A DNA stretch of 63,254 nt, the filler included, from Sluysia triapertura (Eukaryota), in the NCBI GenBank assembly GCA_046118255.1. It is 5 parts of 5 records of this genome, joined end to end, with 100 filler letters (N's around TTAATTAATTAA, not from the genome) between each part and the next. Parts side by side here need not be neighbours in the genome. Positions count along the whole stretch, not along the records: positions 27,763 to 39,775 come from JBJNIA010147720.1; 4 more parts are not named here. The stretch is one strand, 5' to 3'. The notes below the pieces were generated by a model, which made no database searches, had not been told where the DNA came from, and saw only the letters and a list, made by a program, of their open reading frames with translations. The translations under genes were made by a program, and so were the position numbers. This document shows positions 28,814 through 39,775 of the stretch, piece after piece. Numbering within the stretch: position 1 is the first letter of the stretch; every line of letters starts with the position of its first letter.

Positions 28814-29173
28814 ATGATAAATAAGTTTTTAGAAGACAAAATAAAAATTAGTGATCTTGAAGGCGATTTAGTTGAAAATGATTATTTATTGAAAAGAAAT
28901 AATTTAGTTCTAGATATCAAGTCAAATGTTGATCAAGATATGAAATATACAAATGTTGATAATGTTAATTATAATATAAATGAATTTTATCCCAATTCAA
29001 AAATCGATATAGTTGAGTTATGTAATAGAGTCAATCAGTTTTTAAATCTCATTTCCAATGAATCAAAACTTATATCAAATTCTAAGATTAGTATCGATAA
29101 TTTATCTAATTATAAATCTGACGTTCCTATACTTCATATCATGAAAACGCGGCATGTTATCCAAGTAAAGTAG
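28814..29173 (+). CDS. Candidate exon of an unidentified gene
   Basis: 119-codon open frame with protein-like composition and a CAA|gtaaag donor near 29164. A CCAAT cluster lies upstream. No recognisable motif. Confidence 0.3.
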   Translation: MINKFLEDKIKISDLEGDLVENDYLLKRNNLVLDIKSNVDQDMKYTNVDNVNYNINEFYPNSKIDIVELCNRVNQFLNLISNESKLISNSKISIDNLSNYKSDVPILHIMKTRHVIQVK

Positions 29174-31191
29174 ATAGTCAGTATTGTATTGTAAAAAAAC
29201 GAAAGTTAAATTTAGATCGTAAAATTTTTAATTATATTAATAAAATTTACGTAAAAATGCTTTGCTTCTTCGTTGTCTATGATATAAAAGTGAAGTTTTA
29301 AAACTTAAAACCTCTCAATGTTTAATTGTTTTAAAAATAAATAAAATGCTAGATACAATGTTAAATTAAAACTTTCAATTTATAAATACCTATGCATATC
29401 TCAACCAAAAAAGAAAGTACGTTACCTTTATTTTATTTTTACTTCATTTTTATAATATTAATAAACATATAAATGATAATGATAACATTGACAAAAATAA
29501 TATATGAATAATGTTATTACATGATAATAATAATACATAATAATGTATGATAATAATAATAATAATATAATTATAATTATCTTTATATAATCTTTATCAA
29601 TTTCATTGCATATTTTCATATTTGTTTTATTTCGTAAATACACTACTTTAACGACCTAAGTTATATTCGAATTATAAAATTTCATACATCCATTTCTGAC
29701 AAATAAGACGAGTTCAGAATTCACTTGCAAGACTTAGAGACTAATTATAAATTAATTTGTTTAATAAAGTCGATAATATAAAATGAATCAAAATTTATTA
29801 TATCAACTAATATGAAAATAAATGCTAACCTAAATAAAAGTTAATCTACACAATTAAGTGTTAGCAAGGTTTTAAAAATTTGATAATTGTCAAGTTGAGT
29901 TATCAGATAAAGATAATTTATAAAGTCACAAGTTTCTGAAACTTTTATAAATAAAGCAACCTGGATAATAAATTCACAAGTTACTGATTTTATACACAAA
30001 GACTAAATGTCCTTATATGAAGCTCAAAATTGCTTCTTGCTCGGTTATAAGGTACAAAATTAATCAAAAAACTATTTTAATCTAGTTTTATTTTATAGAA
30101 TAACTGTTGAGATTTTAAATCTTTATATTTTATTGCAAAATTACATTATTATCATTTTCGAATAACTATAAAATATACAAGTTCTTACTAAATTGTAAAA
30201 TATTACTTTATAGAAAATTCATTCTAATGAAATTTAATCTTTGAGTCGAAAAGTGTTTCCTGCATTTCAAATAAGAAAATTTAGTCTTTTGAGCAACATT
30301 TTTTTAAAGCGCAAATTGAAAAAATACTGATCAATCATACTTTACAATGTGGTACTAAAAAAATCTTAACAGTAGTAATAATTATAACACATTTTGAATT
30401 AATTTCATTCGTATTTATGCAAATGTGAAAATCATGCACAAAAAAAGAACACACAGATGTCAGAAAACTGTAACGAAATTCCAAACTAATTTATATATTT
30501 TCCAACTCTTTCGAAATTACAAAACATTTAAAAAATTTATTACATATGTAAATATTTAAAGAAATTGAATGATTATATCAATTAGATATTACATCTTGAA
30601 AACTTAATAGTTTTGCGGTATTAACAGTAATGATTGACAGCAATATTTAAAATAACGAAAAATAAAAATTTTAAAAGCTTAATATTTGTGATTTTTTAAT
30701 GTATCATAAAGCCCGAAAAATCAAATTTTACTTTTATTTCTTAAACTTTAATCCCTTAAGAATCATTAGTCAATGAATTTAAAGATTATTTGTTATACAT
30801 ACTAAGAATTTATGACCAGACTGAAGAAAAATTATTTTTCATTGTTAAAGACGTCAACGTTGTGTTTTGAAAGAAAATTAAGTGAATTTTGTGAGATCTA
30901 ACAAATGCTCTGATATTTATGACAACCTGATTGTACTTACATTTTTTGGTTTCTCAAAACAAAAGCTTAAAAGTAGCAATCCAGTTAATTCGATGTCGAC
31001 ATATTTTACGTACAAAAACAATAGACTCAAAAAAATCGGATAAATATTGCTAAATTCACAATTACATTTTACATTTTTATTTAGTTTATCTTTCTAAAGG
31101 TGGACTTAATATGATTAAATTTCCAGTTTCTTAGTTTATTTAACCTTTCCTCATTTAACGTACATAAAACGAATGTAAACGAATATCTTAC

Positions 31192-32006
31192 TTTTCATTC
31201 AATAAACTGACAACATAACGAGGTGCTTTTGGTATTTTTCTTGCAGGATAAAAAGCTGAATTGGAATGATGAATTGTTGTGGTAGCAGAAGCGCGACGAA
31301 TATCATTAAAACTTGGATTCAACTTAGCATTTAAAATAGTGTTACCGATTAAAATTGTTTTATCTTCATCTTCATTATTTTTGTCTATTTCTTTTTTAAC
31401 GTTTGATTCCGAAGGATTTGATTGAGGTATTTCACTTGGCTTTGTTGTTGTTGATGAATTAACTTCATTTGGATCTGAAACTGATATGCTTTGTGAATTA
31501 TTTAAAGTAACTGATACACCTTCAAGTTCCGCAATAATCGTATTATCGATTAATATTGGAGCACTTTGTAATTCATCATTCAACGCTACATTTAAATCCG
31601 TGGAATTTGCTAATAATTCTGCTGGATTAACATGCAATAAAGATATTTCTGGCTGTTCACCACTAGTAGAGGCTGTTAATATGGATAATGGCGGACTGCG
31701 ACTATGCGATACACGTTTTTGTTCATCACATTTACGACGACTACTTTTAAGAGCAGGCAACAACACAGTATTAAAATTGCCATTCAAATCATTTTCATCA
31801 TCAAGACTTCGCTGGTGAAGACATGATTTAGAAGCTCGTGTTATGCCACAACTACTACTTCCACCAGCGATAGGAGTTGAATTATATATCGTAGCACTTT
31901 GACTACGTCCACGATTCGGAATGGGTTGTACACAGCTCTCATTTATTTCATTAAACTCGATTTCTGAATCACTGTCACTAGACATATCATAATTATTTGA
32001 AGCCAT
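31192..32006 (-). CDS. First coding exon of an unidentified gene (disordered, Ser-rich N-terminus)
   Basis: About 270 stop-free codons from MASNNYD, ending AA|gtaaga. Contains RGRSQS and RRAS basophilic kinase-type motifs. Confidence 0.75.
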
Positions 32007-32271
32007 ATTAAACAAAGGACACAGTAATCTTCATAAAATCAATATAAATGAATGATAAATAATTTAACTATAAAAAAAAATAAATTTAGTAACATAAAAC
32101 AATAAATATAAAATAAATGAAATAGTGCTTATTTACACTACAATGTCACCTAGTCATAATGAAAATGATTATTATTTTATTTTTATTTTTCATATCTTTA
32201 AAAAGTTTTTTTTTTGTAATTTTTACATTTAGAAAATAAATATTCGTTACCATATCTACTTTACATAGATT

Positions 32272-32770
32272 ATCGTATCTGTGACACAGTGTATCATTCC
32301 ACCGATCTCATATAAATTTCATACATAAATATCCACGACATCACGTCCAGAATATTGTGCTTGTATTAGTTTATTAGCAATTACATCAGTAGGATCATTA
32401 TAATTAGGTACCAACACTTTTTTATTAGGTACCTTGTAACTAAGTCTAGTATCATTTTGAGATATAACATTAGTTTTGGTTAATGATGCTTCAACATTTT
32501 TGTATGGAACTCCATCGAAATTTTTTGCTGAATATAAAATTTACACATCATTACATGATACTCCTCAATCCCACTTTACTCATTTTACTCATGGCTATCA
32601 AGGCAGTTAAATTAATGAACTTTACAAATTCATTAATATGCATATCCTTAATATCTTTATCGTCAACACCATCCAACCATATGAAATTTTTAATATGGTT
32701 ACCAATGGTTACGTTTAAACCATTATATCGTCTGTGACATACCAGGGTTGCGATTGCTATTTAAAGTAGG
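32272..32770 (-). pseudogene. Decayed agmatine deiminase / Porphyromonas-type peptidyl-arginine deiminase family gene, C-terminal half
   Basis: LNSNRNPGMSQ, NFIWLDG..DIKDMHI, KVLVPNYNDPTD.IAN and V*NLYEIGGMIHCVT (catalytic GGxxHCxT). It carries frameshifts and stops. Confidence 0.8.
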
Positions 32771-33130
32771 ACCACCACATGTTTCAATCAAACCACATTC
32801 TAAAATATTAAATAAATAAATAATTTATTTCTAATATTGAACTACTTTTTATATAATTTTCATTTTTATACCACCAACATATAACATTATTGACATGGTG
32901 ACTTAACATTACCACATTTTAATTTTTCATCATCGACATCACTATCATCATTGTCAGATGATTGTTTATTTTGTTTTTCGTCAGAAAATTTCTCTTTTTC
33001 TACCAAGTTTAATTCATATTTATCGCTTTTATAATGAATTTCACATTGAATCAATTATATTTAACTATCAATACACCAAACTATTTACAAATATCATCGA
33101 ACGCATTAAATTATTTCAATAATGAAAATA

Positions 33131-33162
<32 letters not shown>

Positions 33163-34555
33163 ATACATACATACATACATACATACACTGCAAAATAATA
33201 TGTATGCGTCACTACTGTAGAAATAATAATAATCTGTGCCAATTAGTTACATACATACATATATAATTAGAGAACGGCACTGGATTTATCTTTTTGAATT
33301 TATTAAATTGATAGAACCATATTTTCAATTACATTTTCCGGTAGTTTATCATTGATTCACATTATATCACTAGTAATCTGTCTTTTCATTAAGAAACATT
33401 TATTAATTAATTACAGCGTTGGTTGTAAATAAGACTTCATTATTTTGATAAAATTATTAATAATTTAACTTAAATAAAGATTATATTTATTAAACTTATT
33501 ACTTATCTTTTTAATCAATTAAACATAATACTTCCTGACACAATGTAAAACTTTGTTTCGATTTTCATAAAAAGTAAGCTCTCTATTTTAAATTTTAATA
33601 TCAACATTTTTTCTCCTTGTTGTGTAACTTAAATTTCATAAAATATAATTAAAATTATTTATTAAAATACCAATAAAAAAAACTATTTTATTAAAATTTA
33701 AATGTTGTAAATTTGATATGAGTCACTATTTTAGAAAATGAATCGATACAAATTATACTTAAAATTCCAATAACATCAAAAAATGCTCGTAAATCAATGA
33801 TAACATTTCCATCTTACAAAATAGCGAAAATAATCTATGAATTCAGAAAATTAATTCTCAAGTTTCTAAACGCAATAAATATTTAAAATAATCGAATTAT
33901 TTAATCCAAATATAAAGCAGCATTGTTAAAACTTTTAATCTATTTTGTAAAAAGACTACATTCATATGAAAATAAAACCCCTTTAAAATATGAACACGTA
34001 ACAAAAGTAAACTTGTTTAAAAAAATAAAACAATTTATTATAATGTATTCGAAAAATGCGAACATACATTTTTTGAGGTTTTTCTTTATTAATTTCTAAT
34101 CAAATACAACTTGATCTTTCGTAATTTAAAAATAATTTAAATAAATTATAGGGTATTAAAATTCCTTTTTAATATATCGAAAAATATAAATAAATTATTG
34201 TATTTTATTAAAAATGTTGACTTGTATATAAAATGTTCGATCAAATTGTAGTTTAGTTACAGTAATAAGTAAATATTCTGTGTTATCCCTTGTAGAATCA
34301 GCATTACACGAAAAACACCTTTAAAACATTAAAAATAAGGAATAAAATATTCAGCAAATCTTAAATTATTTTTGGCATATCACATGCATAGATTTTTGAA
34401 CATTAATTTAAATCCTTAGTGAAATCTAGAAGAAAAACCGTTATAAAAATTCAGAAAAGATACATCATAAAACAGTGCATATTCGAAAATATAAGTATTA
34501 TTAAATATAGGATTTATTATTATCTTTAAAAATAATGAAGCATTATTAATTTACG

Positions 34556-34626
34556 GCACTCTATAGACCTGATATAAAGCAATCGCATGGGTTATGCGTG
34601 AATCTGCTTTAAAACGGATCAGGATT

Positions 34627-34661
<35 letters not shown>

Positions 34662-34741
34662 TTGTGCTAATACTCAATAAATGAGTTTAAAAATGCTGCG
34701 TGTATTGCGTAATCATAGTAGGATCAACAGGTCTATAGTGC
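34556..34741. mobile_element. MITE-like element with CACTA(T)-type terminal inverted repeats
   Basis: GCACT(CT)ATAGACCTG ... CAGGTCTATAGTGC, with an internal (AT)n tract. Confidence 0.55.
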
Positions 34742-34899
34742 AATAATAAAATTTTGTTTTATAAAAATAACAAATTTCAACAAAGTTATTTTGATACAAG
34801 TTTCACAATCTACCGAAAAGTTTTATTATTTATAATTTGAAATACAACTGATATATTGCTGATGCTTTTTATGTATTAATTATACAAAAATGCATATTT

Positions 34900-35557
34900 T
34901 TAAAAAGATGAAGTTTCATCACGATAATTATTGATCAATACCACTAAATCATTCCAACGACCGATATTGCATCTGTAGGGATAAGATGAATTTGTGGCCA
35001 ATAAAATGATAGAATTACTATCACTGTGATTGTTTGATTGATTCAGATCATCAACTGAAACAGAATCGGTTGTCGTTGACATTGCTGCCGCAGTGTTAGT
35101 CATCGTCCAATAACAATTAGATTGATTCAATCGACCATATCGAGCAATTAAATCCAAACGTTTTTGAACGGCTTTTGAATCGATTGGAAGTAACAATTCG
35201 TCAAGTTTTGAAGTTATGTATTCGGAATTTTGAGTTTCTAACCAATTATTGATTTGCTCGTAAAACAATTCCTCGTTGTACTTAGATAAAATAAAAAATA
35301 CACTCGATACATTATCCAAAATATCTGAGGCAAGTTGATTACTTCGTATCCACATAAAAATCGACACCAGACATTGTTTGAATGTGTCAGAAAGATCATA
35401 AGGGCAGATTTCATTGTTGCGATTATTGTTAGAGTTTACATAAAAATCGATTAAATTGATACTTTCGTTTGATTTAGGTGGTTGCTTTTTCGAATAATAA
35501 CAGTCTGCCAGAGCAGCAATTCCACGCAAACTGTAGGCTACAATTTGATTGTTAGAA
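34900..35557 (-). CDS. XPO4: Exportin-4-like terminal exon
   Basis: cag| acceptor in phase 2; SNNQIVAYSLRGIAALAD...NVSSVFFILSKYNEELFYEQINNWLETQ parallels the XPO4 C-terminal HEAT repeats. Confidence 0.8.
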
Positions 35558-35689
35558 CTGAAATTATTGAACAATGTTATATGCAAATCAAATTTTTCCT
35601 TATCATATTACATATTGAATTATTTCACATACTAATATATAAAGTGCATCAATTTATATAAGATAGTAATAAGGAACAACATAGAAGTT

Positions 35690-36075
35690 ATGGCCAGAAG
35701 TTAGGCTTAAGTATCTAAAAAGCGATACTTTTAATTAGAAATACTCAAATTGTCCATCATTTACTTCGATAAACTTCAAAACTATGTTCTCCGGAGTAAT
35801 TCTTTCTTTCAATTCTTCCAATGAACACGGTTTAGTACAGTGCACAGCTTCCCAGAGGAAGAAGTCAGGCGGACTAAGGTCGAGCCACACGAGTCCATTT
35901 TTAAGGTAAGAGTTGAATTACATTGTAAATATGCGTGGATATGAACAAGCTAAATTTAATTAAAAAATGCACATATAAGCATGCTAGATATATTATTAAT
36001 CTCAGCGTTTGTTAGATGTATAGGTAAGTGACTGAATAATTTGTCACTGCCCCCTAATTTCTGGCCCGCCATGTT
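35690..36075 (-). mobile_element. Tc1/mariner transposon remnant in an XPO4 intron
   Basis: DLSPPDFFLWE...KPCSLEELKERI...DGQFEY; TIR-like GGCCAGAA.TTAGG at both ends. Confidence 0.75.
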
Positions 36076-36462
36076 TATGTATACATGTAAACTTCCTGAT
36101 ATACCATTCTTTATAAAATACAAAAGCAAGAGAAGTGGTAGAAAATCAGAAGCCTAGATTTTAGATTAAGGAAATACATTGGAATCTAGAATAATATTAA
36201 AAGATAAAAAATAAACTGCTAAGTTGAATAAAACTTTAATAATAACTAAGGTTAGTATAAAATAGCAAGCACGATGGATTACTACCTTCCGAGATTTATT
36301 TTAGGGATGATAATTTATCGAATATTGATTATGATACAAATGTAGCTGAAAATATGTAAAATATTATTAAAGTACTTTAGTTTTTATAGCGATATTCCCT
36401 AATGCTTAAATAATATAATCTTACTTAATATTTTTATTTAGTCATATCATTATAAGACTTAC

Positions 36463-36596
36463 TTGACTAAACTCTTTAGAAACAACTGTACAAGAGAAGT
36501 TGTAAATTCTTGATTCATACGAACCAAGAAACTGCTAGGACTGAATTCTGCAACTAATGTAGCACACTGGAAAAAAACTGTTCCGATTTCAGGAAT
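36463..36596 (-). CDS. XPO4: Exportin-4-like internal exon
   Basis: tag|IPEIGTVFFQCATLVAEFSPSSFLVRMNQEFTTSLVQLFLKSLV|gtaagt; phases match both neighbours. Confidence 0.82.
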
Positions 36597-37480
36597 CTAA
36601 AATTAATGAATTAATCTTGTTTTAAAAAAATGAATACAAAACTAATACAATATTAGACACATTAGTGATTGTAAGTTAAGATCCTAAGACACACATTTGA
36701 TAGGATAACAATAGCAACAAGCACAACTAAGATGTTTGAAATCTAATCATAAAGGATTTCCAGTACAATAAGTTAAAAACCGAAAACTGACATTTAATTA
36801 TATGAAATAAATATGAAATACAAACTACACGAATATCAAAATCTGCGTTATTTAAAACCGAATTATGCAAGGTTACCTGACGTATCCAGACTAAATAATG
36901 ATTCATTTTATAATGGATTCACATTCAAATTCATGAAAATAAACTTGATTTTAGTTGTAAATACACATTAATTTTCGAATAAAATTCACATTTTATGAAT
37001 AATTTGAAAGCAAATAGTTCAATAGTTAATTATTTAGATTTTACAAAAAAAGTGTACACATTTCCCAAAATATCTTCAAGACAAATAAAAGTAAATATTA
37101 CGGATGAAAAATAAATATTTTTCAAAAGGTAAAAACTTTAAATATCGTGCACTTCTTACTTCTAAGAGTATTTATCTATACTTATCTGATTTAAATGTAT
37201 AGATAAGACAAGTATGTGTGAAATTAATGTGTTTATCTACACTTATCAACATTAATTACAAAGTCAGGTCAAATATTAAAAGTGAAGATGAAATTAGTGA
37301 GTTTATCAAATGCAAAACAGACATATTTTGAATTATTTAAAGTGCATCATAAAGTAAAGAAATCTTTTAATTTTTTTGGAACTGCATAAATTTGGTTGAT
37401 TATAAATTTTCAAATTGCATTTTTTTATTATTCTATTCATTTTACAAAGTTATTAAATTAAAATAAGTGTGAAAAATTGC

Positions 37481-38263
37481 CTGTAACATTTCCATATTGA
37501 TATAAGGTGCTAAATATAAAATCAATCGTGATATGACATCATAACCCATCAATCCTTCCAAATCACGATTACCAGTAGAACTGGATAAATTCGAATTAAC
37601 GTTTGTATTATCGATACTAAAATCCAATTCGAATTCATCAAAGACTTGTCTACTTAATAAATCAGATGCTATAGAGAAAATCAATCGAATTTCATTGGTT
37701 GTTTCCTCTTGATTTGAGTAACCAATCAAATTGTTTTGTGATTGATTAGTAGTAATGTTCAATTTCAAAGCGGATTGTATTGGTTGATGTTTGAATTTAT
37801 TTGTGTATAGCTGAAATAATTCGAGACTTAATGAATAGAACCGTACAGTTTGTTCTCGATTCAGTTCTAGTAACATTGTTTTAGCAATTTCCAGGATGCA
37901 TTCCAATAAAGCTTGTATAATACTGGGTTTTAATAACAGTAATGAACGTTGTTTATCATTTGAATAGTCACTTGGTTTCGATTTATCGTCAGATGATGAA
38001 GTCGAACAAGCTGTAACGACACACTTTTGAAGCCATGGATAAAGTGTGTCAAAAAGTCGAATATAACCCATAGCCCAGGGTCGTTGTTGCTGGATACGTG
38101 ACAATCGACTCGGCCAACGTGTGAGAACTAGTCCGTGTAATAAAGAAAGACATTTAACGAATTCAGATTCATAGTCTTTGCTAACTTCTCCAGATCTGAT
38201 GTGAAGATTACTGTATTCTGAAGAGAGAAGTCGAGTGAAACGAAGAGCGACTGGATCCATTAA
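37481..38263 (-). CDS. XPO4: Exportin-4-like internal exon
   Basis: LLECILEIAKTMLLEL...FYSLSLELFQLY...EETTNEIRLIFSIASDLLSR...LAPYINMEMLQ parallels XPO4; 783 nt, phase 0. Confidence 0.82.
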
Positions 38264-39775
38264 CTAAAAATAATTTAATCGAATATAACAATGAACTGTA
38301 ATGTATATAAATTATATTGTAAATGATTTTCCAGATATTTATTTATTCAATTTATTAATAAAAACAATTGAATCCATTGTAATGTTTTAGTTGTTTTATT
38401 AAAACATCACATTATTTATTTATTAATTTTAATTATATACAATATTTTGAAAAATATATAGCTAGTGTCGCACCTTCTAGTTATTCTGATTCTTAATATG
38501 TATGTAGTTCGGGTCTAAAGTATCCACAGTTGGAATGCGTAGAACATATATTTACTCTATTACTTAGCTAAGAATAAATTTTATAATAAAATTTTAGTAA
38601 ACTATACTTTTACATCTTTAAATTGAGAAGCTACATCAAAACTAAATATTCAATGAATAATCAATAAATAAATAAATTAGTGAAGAGAGCTTTAATGAAA
38701 AGCAGTTTTAATGAAATCTACTTTTGAACAATTATTAAAAGAACAAACTGCCTTTGTTAGATTTATTTATTGTTGTTAATTTTAAGAAATCAACACTCAA
38801 TATTTATGTAATCTAGTTTCGTCAGGCTTCAAATATTAAAAAATTTAAATTCATAAAAATAAAATTAAATAAAAACTTAAAATTTTGTCTACCAGTTTTG
38901 CAGCTAGGAGACAGTGCAAGTGATCCTACTTGCAAACATATCTCATAAAGTTAAATATAATAGAAATCTGTGAATCTTTTTAAAAGTTACGAAAGATTGT
39001 TTTTCTTTCTAGTTTCAATCTCTAACTTTTGTCAGGCGATTTCAAACTGTCAAATCGTGGTAAAGAAATTAAATTATAGAACCATGGTAATACATATTTT
39101 ATTACCAATAGAATAAATAAAGTTTCAATTATACTTTCAATCAATCAAACATTTTAAGCTTAATGTTTATAATATTTATTATTTTATGATTCACTTTTTG
39201 GATAAAAAAATACAAATTATAACAATGGCAACAGTTAATGTATCAATATACATAATGTTGATAAATATAATCAAGAATCTTTTCTTTTAAGTTACAGAAA
39301 CTAAACCAAATATAATACAACTCGATAAAATACTTTGACTTAATAAAAAGAATAAGAAAGAATGATTGACTAACTAAATTATAATAAAATGTAAAACACT
39401 ACAATGTAAGTCTTACGTTCTAATTTGTTGTGGTGGCCAATCTATTACTTTTAACAAATTTTATTAAAAAATTTTTTTTTTTTCCGAATTTAACAAAACT
39501 ACATTCACTTTCAAAATCTTCAATGTATATTTAAAACTCACTAGAAACACTTTTATACACAGTTCCATATCAACACAATCAAAATTATATTTTTCAATAT
39601 CGCAATGTACCAAAGTCTAGAATATAATTTATCTTCTTTACATCCATTAAGCCACTATCTTTTCAAAATACACCTATCCCCCGATTTACACGGTACTTGT
39701 TTTACACGGTTTTCCAAATAAGTTTTTTTGTTTTTATCGCATTTGAAAATTTTTAATTTTCGATTTACACGTTTT

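What the first reader, a model, noticed from the sequence alone, without database searches (positions are those of the whole stretch)
32272..32770. Bacterial-type agmatine/peptidyl-arginine deiminase fossil embedded between spliced animal genes (HGT candidate)
Seen: minus-strand frames give NRNPGMSQ, NFIWLDG, DIKDMHI, VLVPNYNDPTD and NLYEIGGMIHCVT; the ORF track misses it. It sits on one contig about 270 bp from a eukaryotic first exon and about 2 kb from exportin-4, is AT-rich like the host and is broken, which argues against contamination. Known: the PAD_porph family uses a GGxxHCxT catalytic Cys and is typical of bacteria and plants, not animals; from memory the motifs resemble Bacteroidetes members. 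Inference: the lineage acquired the gene horizontally and may keep intact paralogs elsewhere, giving an animal an agmatine-to-carbamoylputrescine or citrullination activity.
Basis: partly seen in the sequence, partly recalled or inferred. Interest (0 to 1): 0.75.

Follow-up and report, generated by a model that had tools for sequence, protein, structure and literature searches.

The report
Dead bacterial-type deiminase gene fragment
A 540-base, badly broken remnant of the back half of a bacterial-type (Bacteroidota-like) agmatine/arginine deiminase gene lies in the spacer between two host genes of a very AT-rich eukaryote; it is a real relic of foreign DNA, but it is dead and gives the host no enzyme.

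Summary
Window 32277-32818, minus strand, holds four collinear pieces of the C-terminal ~180 residues of a PAD_porph (PF04371) protein. A subfamily HMM scores them 6.5, 38.0, 69.7 and 20.0 bits; nothing else in the 12-kb piece exceeds 3.4 bits.

The copy is a truncated pseudogene:
- the N-terminal ~200 residues are absent;
- there are two frameshifts, three in-frame stops and two in-frame deletions;
- the His-x-Asp motif reads His-Ile-Asn;
- 28% of otherwise near-invariant positions are replaced.

Its nearest relatives, out of 1.84 billion representative proteins, are a Bacteroidota-dominated subfamily, many with type-IX secretion tails. Identity is at most about 54%. Trees put it on a long branch in an unresolved backbone, so no donor can be named.

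The flanks look like host DNA: 17-22% GC, microsatellites, no N, open exons with splice-like ends, and no other bacterial remnant.

The best reading is an old, neutrally decaying relic of a bacterium-to-eukaryote DNA transfer. Three points are unconfirmed:
- that the host is an animal;
- that the neighbour is exportin-4;
- that reads span the junctions.

No intact paralog is in evidence. This is a new member of a known kind, of low to moderate interest.

The parts
32277..32818 (-). Whole PAD_porph-derived pseudogene fragment. It corresponds to residues ~200-382 of 387-aa relative P0002 and to Pfam profile positions ~174-321.
32729..32818 (-). Piece 1 (frame of 33100). It carries the EGG-like motif (reads ECG) and the NRNPGM motif, with an ~8-residue deletion relative to the bacterial proteins.
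   Evidence: 6.5 bits, HMM 208-228
32713..32728 (-). Interval holding frameshift 1: one extra base relative to the 19-codon bacterial spacing between NRNPGM and FIWLDG.
   Evidence: HSP bounds; codon count on the sequence
32590..32712 (-). Piece 2 (frame of 33099). It carries the FIWLDG motif and the catalytic-His motif. His is at 32638-32640; the Asp of His-x-Asp is replaced by Asn at 32632-32634.
   Evidence: 38.0 bits, HMM 240-276
32575..32590 (-). Interval holding frameshift 2 (frame of 33099 to frame of 33098).
32565..32567 (-). In-frame TGA stop inside the homologous frame.
   Evidence: the HSP of P0003 runs through it
32541..32543 (-). In-frame TAA stop inside the homologous frame.
32322..32540 (-). 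Piece 3 (frame of 33098). It carries VLVPNYNDP and the following helix, and is the best-preserved part. It has a ~5-7-residue deletion in the GSYxNYY stretch.
   Evidence: 69.7 bits, HMM 292-369
32319..32321 (-). In-frame TGA stop at the position of the conserved Arg of the DVRNLY motif.
32277..32318 (-). Piece 4: the NLYEIGGMIHCVT motif with the catalytic Cys retained (32286-32288). The open frame then ends at 32259 with no secretion tail.
   Evidence: 20.0 bits, HMM 372-385
31188..32015 (-). Downstream host exon (not part of the relic). It starts with ATG at 32006 and has a GTAAGA donor overlapping its stop. Its conserved core has relatives P0137 and P0138.
34900..35586 (-). Upstream host open exon (not part of the relic).

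Best explanation
This is a non-functional relic of foreign DNA. About 540 bp from the 3' half of a bacterial PAD_porph-family gene became integrated into the 2.9-kb spacer between two same-strand host genes of a very AT-rich eukaryote. The source gene belonged to the secreted, Bacteroidota-dominated subfamily annotated 'agmatine deiminase family protein'.

The N-terminal half of the fold is absent, either from the start or through later deletion. Since then the fragment has drifted without constraint. It encodes no enzyme and has no promoter or start codon of its own.

Shown here: homology, truncation, disruptions, relaxed constraint, nearest relatives, and gap-free embedding in host-like DNA. 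Inferred: the direction of transfer and a Bacteroidota-like donor, neutral decay since insertion (roughly 0.14 substitutions per site), and lack of function.
For: - Homology.
- Truncation: no hit to HMM positions 1-207 anywhere in 27763-39775, in any frame.
- Disruptions: two frameshifts, three stops and two deletions.
- Relaxed constraint: at 64 columns that are at least 90% conserved, the fragment keeps 72%, against a median of 98% (minimum 87.5%) for homologs. Identity to homologs is at most 54.5% (median 50%), while homologs share 67% with each other.
- Catalytic core: His-x-Asp reads His-Ile-Asn, and the N-terminal guanidine-binding Asp lies in the missing half (core definition from PMC8826395).
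- Nearest relatives: the exhaustive search of 1.84 billion representatives found only 14 hits, all in one subfamily, several with Por_Secre_tail. Of 397 related loci in prokaryote genomes, 76 of the best 80 are labelled Bacteroidota.
- Host context: no N in the piece and flanks at 17-22% GC with microsatellites. Neighbouring exons have splice-like ends and a conserved relative. None of 793 ORFs from the 80 bacterial loci, neighbour genes included, matches outside 32250-32830, apart from one chance hit.
- The counts of stops and indels are about what roughly 0.14 neutral substitutions per site would give. This is my own rough calculation.
Against: - The donor is not resolved. The fragment sits on a long branch (1.76-1.87) in an unresolved backbone.
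- The AU test does not reject a clade with the diatom copies (p=0.235).
- No read-level check of the junctions was possible.
- The host's identity as an animal is not shown by any tool result.
- Composition does not separate host from donor.
- At variable columns the fragment is more divergent (39%) than uniform decay from a typical member predicts (49%). The source was therefore an outlier lineage, or the history is longer than this simple model allows.
Confidence: 0.72

Rival explanations
1. It is the remnant of a gene that once worked in the host lineage. Under this reading the gene was acquired by transfer, expressed for a time, and then lost its 5' half by deletion and decayed.
For: - It has the same orientation as both neighbours.
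- At variable columns it is more divergent than uniform neutral decay predicts (39% observed, 49% predicted). That would fit extra evolution as a host gene or in an unsampled lineage.
- Diatoms show that eukaryotes can keep working genes of this subfamily.
Against: - No intron lies in the 540 bp. The AG at 32800 falls inside the homologous coding frame.
- No start codon, signal sequence or N-terminal half was found within 7 kb upstream.
- Constrained positions are replaced at about the same rate (28%) as expected with no constraint at all, and every intact homolog keeps at least 87.5% of them.
- No closer relative (above 54% identity) exists among about 15 billion predicted proteins.
Confidence: 0.15
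2. It is an assembly artefact. Under this reading a piece of DNA from a Bacteroidota contaminant or gut bacterium was joined by mistake into a host contig, and the frameshifts are long-read errors.
For: - Junctions could not be checked with reads.
- The fragment's GC (30%) lies within the range of the bacterial homologs.
- The two frameshifts alone could be indel errors.
Against: - Three in-frame stops are substitutions, not indels.
- 18 of 64 near-invariant residues are replaced, and there are two multi-codon deletions.
- Best identity to any known protein is only about 54%. A live contaminant's gene would be intact.
- Both sides are host-like, with no N and no neighbouring bacterial gene remnant. 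A chimera would therefore need two false joins 540 bp apart, in the middle of a gene.
Confidence: 0.04
3. The immediate source was not a bacterium. Under this reading the source was another eukaryote (for example an alga or a prey organism) that already carried this subfamily, or an ancient eukaryotic gene lost almost everywhere.
For: - A diatom (Nitzschia, MMETSP0014) and a second transcript-like contig carry full-length members.
- The AU test does not reject fragment plus diatoms as one clade (p=0.235).
Against: - In both trees the diatom pair sits in a supported group with Lysobacter, Verrucomicrobiota and Planctomycetota sequences. That group excludes the fragment (99 SH-aLRT; 95/92 for the 10-row clade).
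- The fragment's nearest rows by path length are Bacteroidota-type.
- Identity to the diatom proteins (about 40%) is lower than to the Bacteroidota-type ones (48-54%).
Confidence: 0.08

Closest known systems
Bacteroidota 'agmatine deiminase family proteins' with a type-IX secretion tail (PF04371 + Por_Secre_tail; for example P0003, P0004, P0011, P0012, loci L001-L080)
   Same: - Motifs are collinear: EGG, NRNPGM(T/S)Q, FIWLDG, TDMHID, VLVPNYNDP(N/T)D, NLYE.GGM(I/V)HCVT.
- Identity is 48-54% over about 154 residues.
- This is the best-scoring group in an exhaustive search.
   Different: - Only the last ~180 residues are present.
- The copy is broken by two frameshifts and three stops.
- It has no signal peptide and no secretion tail.
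- The Asp of His-x-Asp is lost.
- It sits in eukaryote-like DNA rather than a bacterial operon.
Canonical agmatine deiminase AguA/AIH (TIGR03380; PDB 2jer, 1vkp, 3hvm)
   Same: It has the same Pfam family and fold class and the same GGxxHCxT Cys motif. The largest piece hits the aguA models weakly.
   Different: - Even the intact nearest relatives score 169-189 bits against an equivalog cut-off of 381.8, so the subfamily's substrate is not established.
- The plant enzymes give no hit to the fragment at E of 10 or less.
Porphyromonas gingivalis peptidylarginine deiminase PPAD (PDB 4yt9, 5ak7)
   Same: It belongs to the same Pfam family, and PPAD is also secreted through the type-IX system in Bacteroidota.
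   Different: It is a very distant relative: relative P0002 matches PPAD at E=2.4e-6 but the agmatine-deiminase-like 1xkn at E=1e-56. Nothing here supports citrullination.
Decayed bacterial DNA insertions in invertebrate nuclear genomes (for example Wolbachia-derived inserts); comparison drawn from general knowledge
   Same: It is a short, promoterless, frameshifted fragment of a bacterial gene in intergenic host DNA, decaying neutrally.
   Different: - The source is Bacteroidota-like, not a known endosymbiont.
- It is much more diverged from any sampled donor (54% protein identity at most).
- It is a single 540-bp piece without neighbouring donor genes.

Membership tests
PAD_porph (Pfam PF04371) | Significant sequence match to the family profile | tested here: met
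   The pieces hit collinear profile positions 174-209 (14.7 bits) and 230-302 (24.0 bits). Each is just under the 25-bit whole-protein cut-off because it is a fragment. The subfamily HMM gives 6.5, 38.0, 69.7 and 20.0 bits. tblastn E is about 6e-28.
PAD_porph (Pfam PF04371) | Complete domain (about 320 profile positions), including the N-terminal half with the first guanidine-binding Asp | tested here: not met
   No match to HMM positions 1-207 in any frame of 27763-39775.
PAD_porph (Pfam PF04371) | Catalytic Cys in the C-terminal GGxxHCxT motif | tested here: met
   GGMIHCVT is present, with the Cys codon at 32286-32288.
PAD_porph (Pfam PF04371) | Catalytic His followed by the guanidine-binding Asp (His-x-Asp). 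The core is defined as Cys, His and two Asp/Glu in PMC8826395. | tested here: not met
   His is kept (32638-32640), but the Asp is Asn (32632-32634) and the following Gly is Glu.
PAD_porph (Pfam PF04371) | Uninterrupted reading frame | tested here: not met
   Two frameshifts and three in-frame stops.
Agmatine deiminase AguA (NCBIfam TIGR03380 equivalog) | Score above the equivalog cut-off (381.8 bits) | tested here: not met
   The fragment scores 22.4 bits. Intact nearest relatives score 169-189 bits.
Type-IX-secreted Bacteroidota subfamily | C-terminal Por_Secre_tail sorting domain after the catalytic domain | tested here: not met
   The frame ends 9 codons after HCVT, at 32259. There is no hit to HMM positions 386-493. 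Not all intact members carry the tail.
Bacterium-to-eukaryote gene transfer relic | Nearest relatives are bacterial, with no closer eukaryotic relative | tested here: met
   The only identified eukaryote members (diatom) are more distant (about 40% identity).
Bacterium-to-eukaryote gene transfer relic | Nested with support inside a bacterial clade | tested here: inconclusive
   The fragment is on a long branch in an unresolved backbone and no starred clade holds it. The AU test does not reject a clade with diatoms.
Bacterium-to-eukaryote gene transfer relic | Physical linkage to host genes confirmed by reads | not testable with these tools
Bacterium-to-eukaryote gene transfer relic | Host is an animal, and the relic is absent or present in related animals | not testable with these tools
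   The host was not identified. The neighbours have no Pfam or PDB match, and there is only a language-model lead to eukaryotic helical-repeat proteins.

The most novel reading that the evidence does not exclude
The relic may mark a lineage that once used, or elsewhere in its genome still keeps, an intact Bacteroidota-type secreted PAD_porph enzyme. That would give an animal a guanidino-modifying activity (on agmatine or another substrate) that animals are not known to have. This truncated copy would then be a dead duplicate of a working, domesticated gene.
Probability: 0.08. Interest if true: 0.6.

Novelty: new member of a known kind. Interest (0 to 1): 0.28.

Why it matters
It adds one documented case of bacterial (Bacteroidota-like) DNA fixed in a eukaryotic nuclear genome. 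Here the usual contamination objection is weak, because the piece is broken, truncated and flanked on both sides by host-like DNA. It confers no function, so its value is as a marker. If the same relic is found at the syntenic site in related species, it dates the transfer and can serve as a rare genomic character. It would matter more only if an intact paralog were found. I found no paper reporting a PAD_porph transfer into animals, but that search covers open-access text only.

Tried and rejected
- **Introns instead of frameshifts: rejected.** Spacing between motifs matches the bacterial proteins to within one base at both junctions. The candidate 'introns' would be 11-27 nt. The AG at 32800 lies inside the homologous frame.
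- **Stop-codon reassignment: rejected.** Two different stop codons occur and the frameshifts remain.
- **A second PAD-like piece at 31233-31379 inside the neighbouring exon** (weak tblastn hits, best E=0.033): rejected. The subfamily HMM scores that exon -0.8 bits.
- **N-terminal half elsewhere in the piece:** not found.
- **Other donor genes next to the fragment:** none.
- **Viral vector:** no relative in viral contigs.
- **Composition as evidence of long residence in the host:** not informative.
- **Exportin-4 identity of the neighbour:**
  - Pfam, PDB phmmer and the word search were all blank. The word search cannot see proteins much longer than the exon used as query.
  - The single-sequence AlphaFold model had pLDDT 45.8, so it was not used for a fold search.
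- **Host identification:**
  - No Rfam hit.
  - The neighbouring exon has only two anonymous metagenome relatives.
- **Reads and earlier findings:** Neither was retried by another route.
- **AU test on the 111-row tree:** did not finish, so it was repeated on 42 rows.
- **Read-through used for alignment and trees:** the pseudogene was read through only inside scripts, with X at every break.

Full report
**1. What is in the sequence**

Taken as stop-to-stop pieces:
- 32554-32760 hits Pfam PF04371 (PAD_porph) at profile positions 174-209 (E=0.018).
- 32322-32540 hits the same model at positions 230-302 (E=2.7e-5).
- 32322-32540 also hits the NCBIfam agmatine deiminase models and the solved agmatine deiminases of Helicobacter pylori, Porphyromonas gingivalis and Streptococcus mutans.

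An exhaustive phmmer search with that 73-residue piece against 1.84 billion representative proteins returned only 14 hits at E of 0.001 or less. All have the same motif set, at 39-53% identity.

tblastn of these relatives against the 12-kb piece gives three collinear HSPs: 32806-32729, 32712-32590 and 32573-32277. They correspond to residues ~205-382 of the 387-residue relative P0002, with a joint E of about 6e-28.

I built an HMM from 103 members of the subfamily. It scores the four pieces 6.5, 38.0, 69.7 and 20.0 bits at collinear positions 208-385. Every other six-frame segment of 27763-39775 scores 3.4 bits or less.

**2. State of the copy**

It is a truncated pseudogene.
- **Truncation.** Nothing in the piece matches HMM positions 1-207, in any frame. 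About 200 N-terminal residues are missing, including the first guanidine-binding Asp.
- **Frameshifts.** Between the NRNPGM and FIWLDG motifs there are 58 bases where the bacterial proteins have 19 codons. That is a one-base frameshift, within 32713-32728. A second frameshift lies at about 32575-32590.
- **Stops.** In-frame stops stand at 32565-32567 (TGA), 32541-32543 (TAA) and 32319-32321 (TGA, at the conserved Arg of DVRNLY).
- **Deletions.** Two in-frame deletions of about 8 and 5-7 residues are visible in the alignment.
- **Catalytic core.** The catalytic Cys motif (GGMIHCVT) and the catalytic His survive. The Asp of the His-x-Asp motif is Asn and the EGG motif reads ECG. The family's core is Cys, His and two Asp/Glu (PMC8826395).
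- **Not introns.** The spacings match the bacterial proteins and no plausible splice pair exists.

**3. Relaxed constraint**

Over 154 aligned residues the fragment is at most 54.5% identical to any homolog (median 50%). The homologs share a median of 67% with each other.

At 64 columns that are at least 90% conserved, the fragment keeps 72%. Intact homologs keep a median of 98%, and never less than 87.5%. At variable columns the fragment has 39% identity to the consensus, against 67% for homologs.

So constrained positions have been replaced about as freely as any others. As a rough calculation of my own, 27-28% replacement without constraint corresponds to about 0.14 substitutions per site. 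That is some 70-80 substitutions in 540 bp, and it would be expected to produce a handful of stops and indels, as observed. This fits neutral decay since insertion and does not require a functional period in the host. The extra divergence at variable columns means the source was probably an outlier lineage, so the calculation is approximate.

**4. Relatives**

Several of the 14 representative hits carry C-terminal Por_Secre_tail (type-IX secretion) domains and sit in Bacteroidota-like contexts.

A scan of one genome per prokaryotic species found 397 related loci. Seventy-six of the best 80 are labelled Bacteroidota (Flavobacteriales, Chitinophagales, Sphingobacteriales, Cytophagales, Saprospirales, Bacteroidales), at 43-53% identity to the largest piece. 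The scan's patterns came from the same subfamily, so it is biased towards it. The unbiased evidence is the exhaustive search.

The subfamily also occurs in Lysobacter, Verrucomicrobiota, Planctomycetota and a few Bacillota. Two transcript-like contigs also carry it, one of them labelled Nitzschia (MMETSP0014), a diatom.

Intact members score 169-194 bits on the agmatine deiminase models, against cut-offs of 381.8 and 483. They match the structural-genomics protein 1xkn best (E=1e-56) and the P. gingivalis peptidylarginine deiminase only at E=2.4e-6. They are agmatine-deiminase-like, but their substrate is not established, and nothing points to protein citrullination.

**5. Phylogeny**

I read the fragment through with X at every break, inside scripts only, and aligned it with the ORFs of the 80 loci and 30 database proteins.
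- In a quick 111-row tree and a careful 42-row tree, the fragment has an end branch of 1.76-1.87 changes per column and joins an unresolved backbone. Its nearest rows by path length are Bacteroidota-type.
- The diatom pair sits elsewhere, in a supported group with non-Bacteroidota bacteria.
- An AU test does not reject a tree that joins the fragment to the diatoms (log-likelihood difference 18.8, p=0.235).
- The donor therefore cannot be named more precisely than 'this bacterial, Bacteroidota-dominated subfamily'.
- Rows left out of the small tree: the very long rows P0013 and P0008, the short rows P0001, P0006 and P0012, and most near-duplicate loci.

**6. Context**

The piece has no N. The fragment is 30.4% GC and the DNA on either side is 17% and 21.5% GC, with (AAT)n and (ATAC)n microsatellites 300-370 bp upstream of the fragment.

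The fragment lies in a 2.9-kb spacer between two long open frames on the same strand.
- The downstream frame (31188-32015) starts with ATG at 32006 and has a GTAAGA donor overlapping its stop. Its conserved core has two relatives in a metagenome assembly, at 49% identity over 48% of the query.
- The upstream gene has exon-like frames at 34900-35586 and 37442-38260, the latter preceded by a tttttag acceptor.

I could not confirm that the upstream gene is exportin-4. Pfam and PDB sequence searches were blank. A language-model search pointed only to eukaryotic HEAT/TPR-type proteins. A single-sequence structure model was all-helical but of low confidence (pLDDT 45.8), so I did not search with it.

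None of 793 ORFs taken from the 80 bacterial loci, neighbours of the deiminase gene included, matches the piece outside 32250-32830, apart from one chance hit. The foreign DNA is therefore limited to about 540 bp.

Composition does not help. The bacterial homologs have CDS GC of 31-51% and GC3 down to 0.19, which brackets the fragment's 30% and 0.22. The argument from breakage and embedding is strong.

**7. Explanations**

- **Best (0.72).** An old, neutrally decaying relic of a bacterium-to-eukaryote DNA transfer, with no function.
- **Rival: remnant of a once-functional host gene (0.15).** This is disfavoured by the missing 5' half, the lack of introns and the unconstrained replacement at conserved sites.
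- **Rival: a non-bacterial immediate source (0.08).** The AU test does not exclude it, but identities and both trees disfavour it.
- **Rival: an assembly chimera (0.04).** It would need two false joins inside a gene that is itself decayed far beyond sequencing error.

**8. What could not be done**

- Only this 12-kb piece of the genome is available, so intact paralogs elsewhere cannot be excluded. No protein closer than 54% identity exists in the public collections searched.
- I found no paper describing a PAD_porph transfer into animals.

**9. Verdict**

This is a genuine, well-delimited bacterial-type gene fossil. It is a new member of a known kind and is non-functional, so interest is low to moderate.

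Noticed in passing
window 35738-35917 (-): An open segment containing '...DLSPPDFFLW...SLEELKERI...' looks, from memory, like the C-terminal end of a Tc1/mariner-type transposase. It lies inside an apparent intron of the upstream helical-repeat gene. Pfam gave no hit for this 60-residue piece.
   Followed up: partly
P0014 / L083 and P0018 (Nitzschia, MMETSP0014): Diatom transcript-like contigs encode full-length, apparently intact members of the same bacterial subfamily, with a Ser/Thr/Ala-rich N-terminal extension. Their nearest bacterial relatives are Lysobacter-type, at about 54% identity. This is a separate candidate for transfer into a eukaryote.
   Followed up: partly
L084:1-679 (P0008, Logan SRR28148152): A 1.6-kb, 46% GC contig of unknown origin carries another broken member of the subfamily. 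It has an in-frame stop after the NRN motif and a frameshift before FIWLDG, which is the same inter-motif stretch where the window's first frameshift lies. About 900 bp follow with only one short 76-residue ORF call.
   Followed up: partly
P0013 (385 aa, Logan, 12-kb contig): A full-length subfamily member from an AT-rich source lacks the GGxxHCxT Cys motif and the His-x-Asp motif, so it is probably a catalytically dead homolog. It groups with Tepidibacter on a very long branch.
   Followed up: no
P0001 (84 aa, Logan SRR28520270, 4.1-kb contigs): The best-scoring hit to the window's piece is itself only an 84-residue fragment ending just before the Cys motif. It sits next to a 43-residue gene call on contigs of a very large sample, and no DNA could be fetched. 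In the quick tree it groups with a Bacillota (Cellulosilyticaceae) sequence.
   Followed up: partly
window 31188-32015 (-): The downstream host exon has a conserved core (…NRGRSQ…LLPALKSSRRK…SHSRSPPLSIL…) shared with two anonymous metagenome proteins, P0137 and P0138, of much higher GC. It matches no Pfam family, so it is an uncharacterised conserved eukaryote-like protein.
   Followed up: partly
window 33118-33187: Adjacent (AAT)14 and (ATAC)7 microsatellites lie 300-370 bp upstream of the point where the deiminase homology stops. They may mark the region where the 5' half was lost.
   Followed up: no
L074 and L007/L008: A contig binned as 'uncultured Bifidobacterium' (L074) carries a typical Bacteroidota-type copy and is probably mis-binned. 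A Flavobacterium MAG (L007) and Myroides marinus (L008) are identical over the compared region.
   Followed up: no
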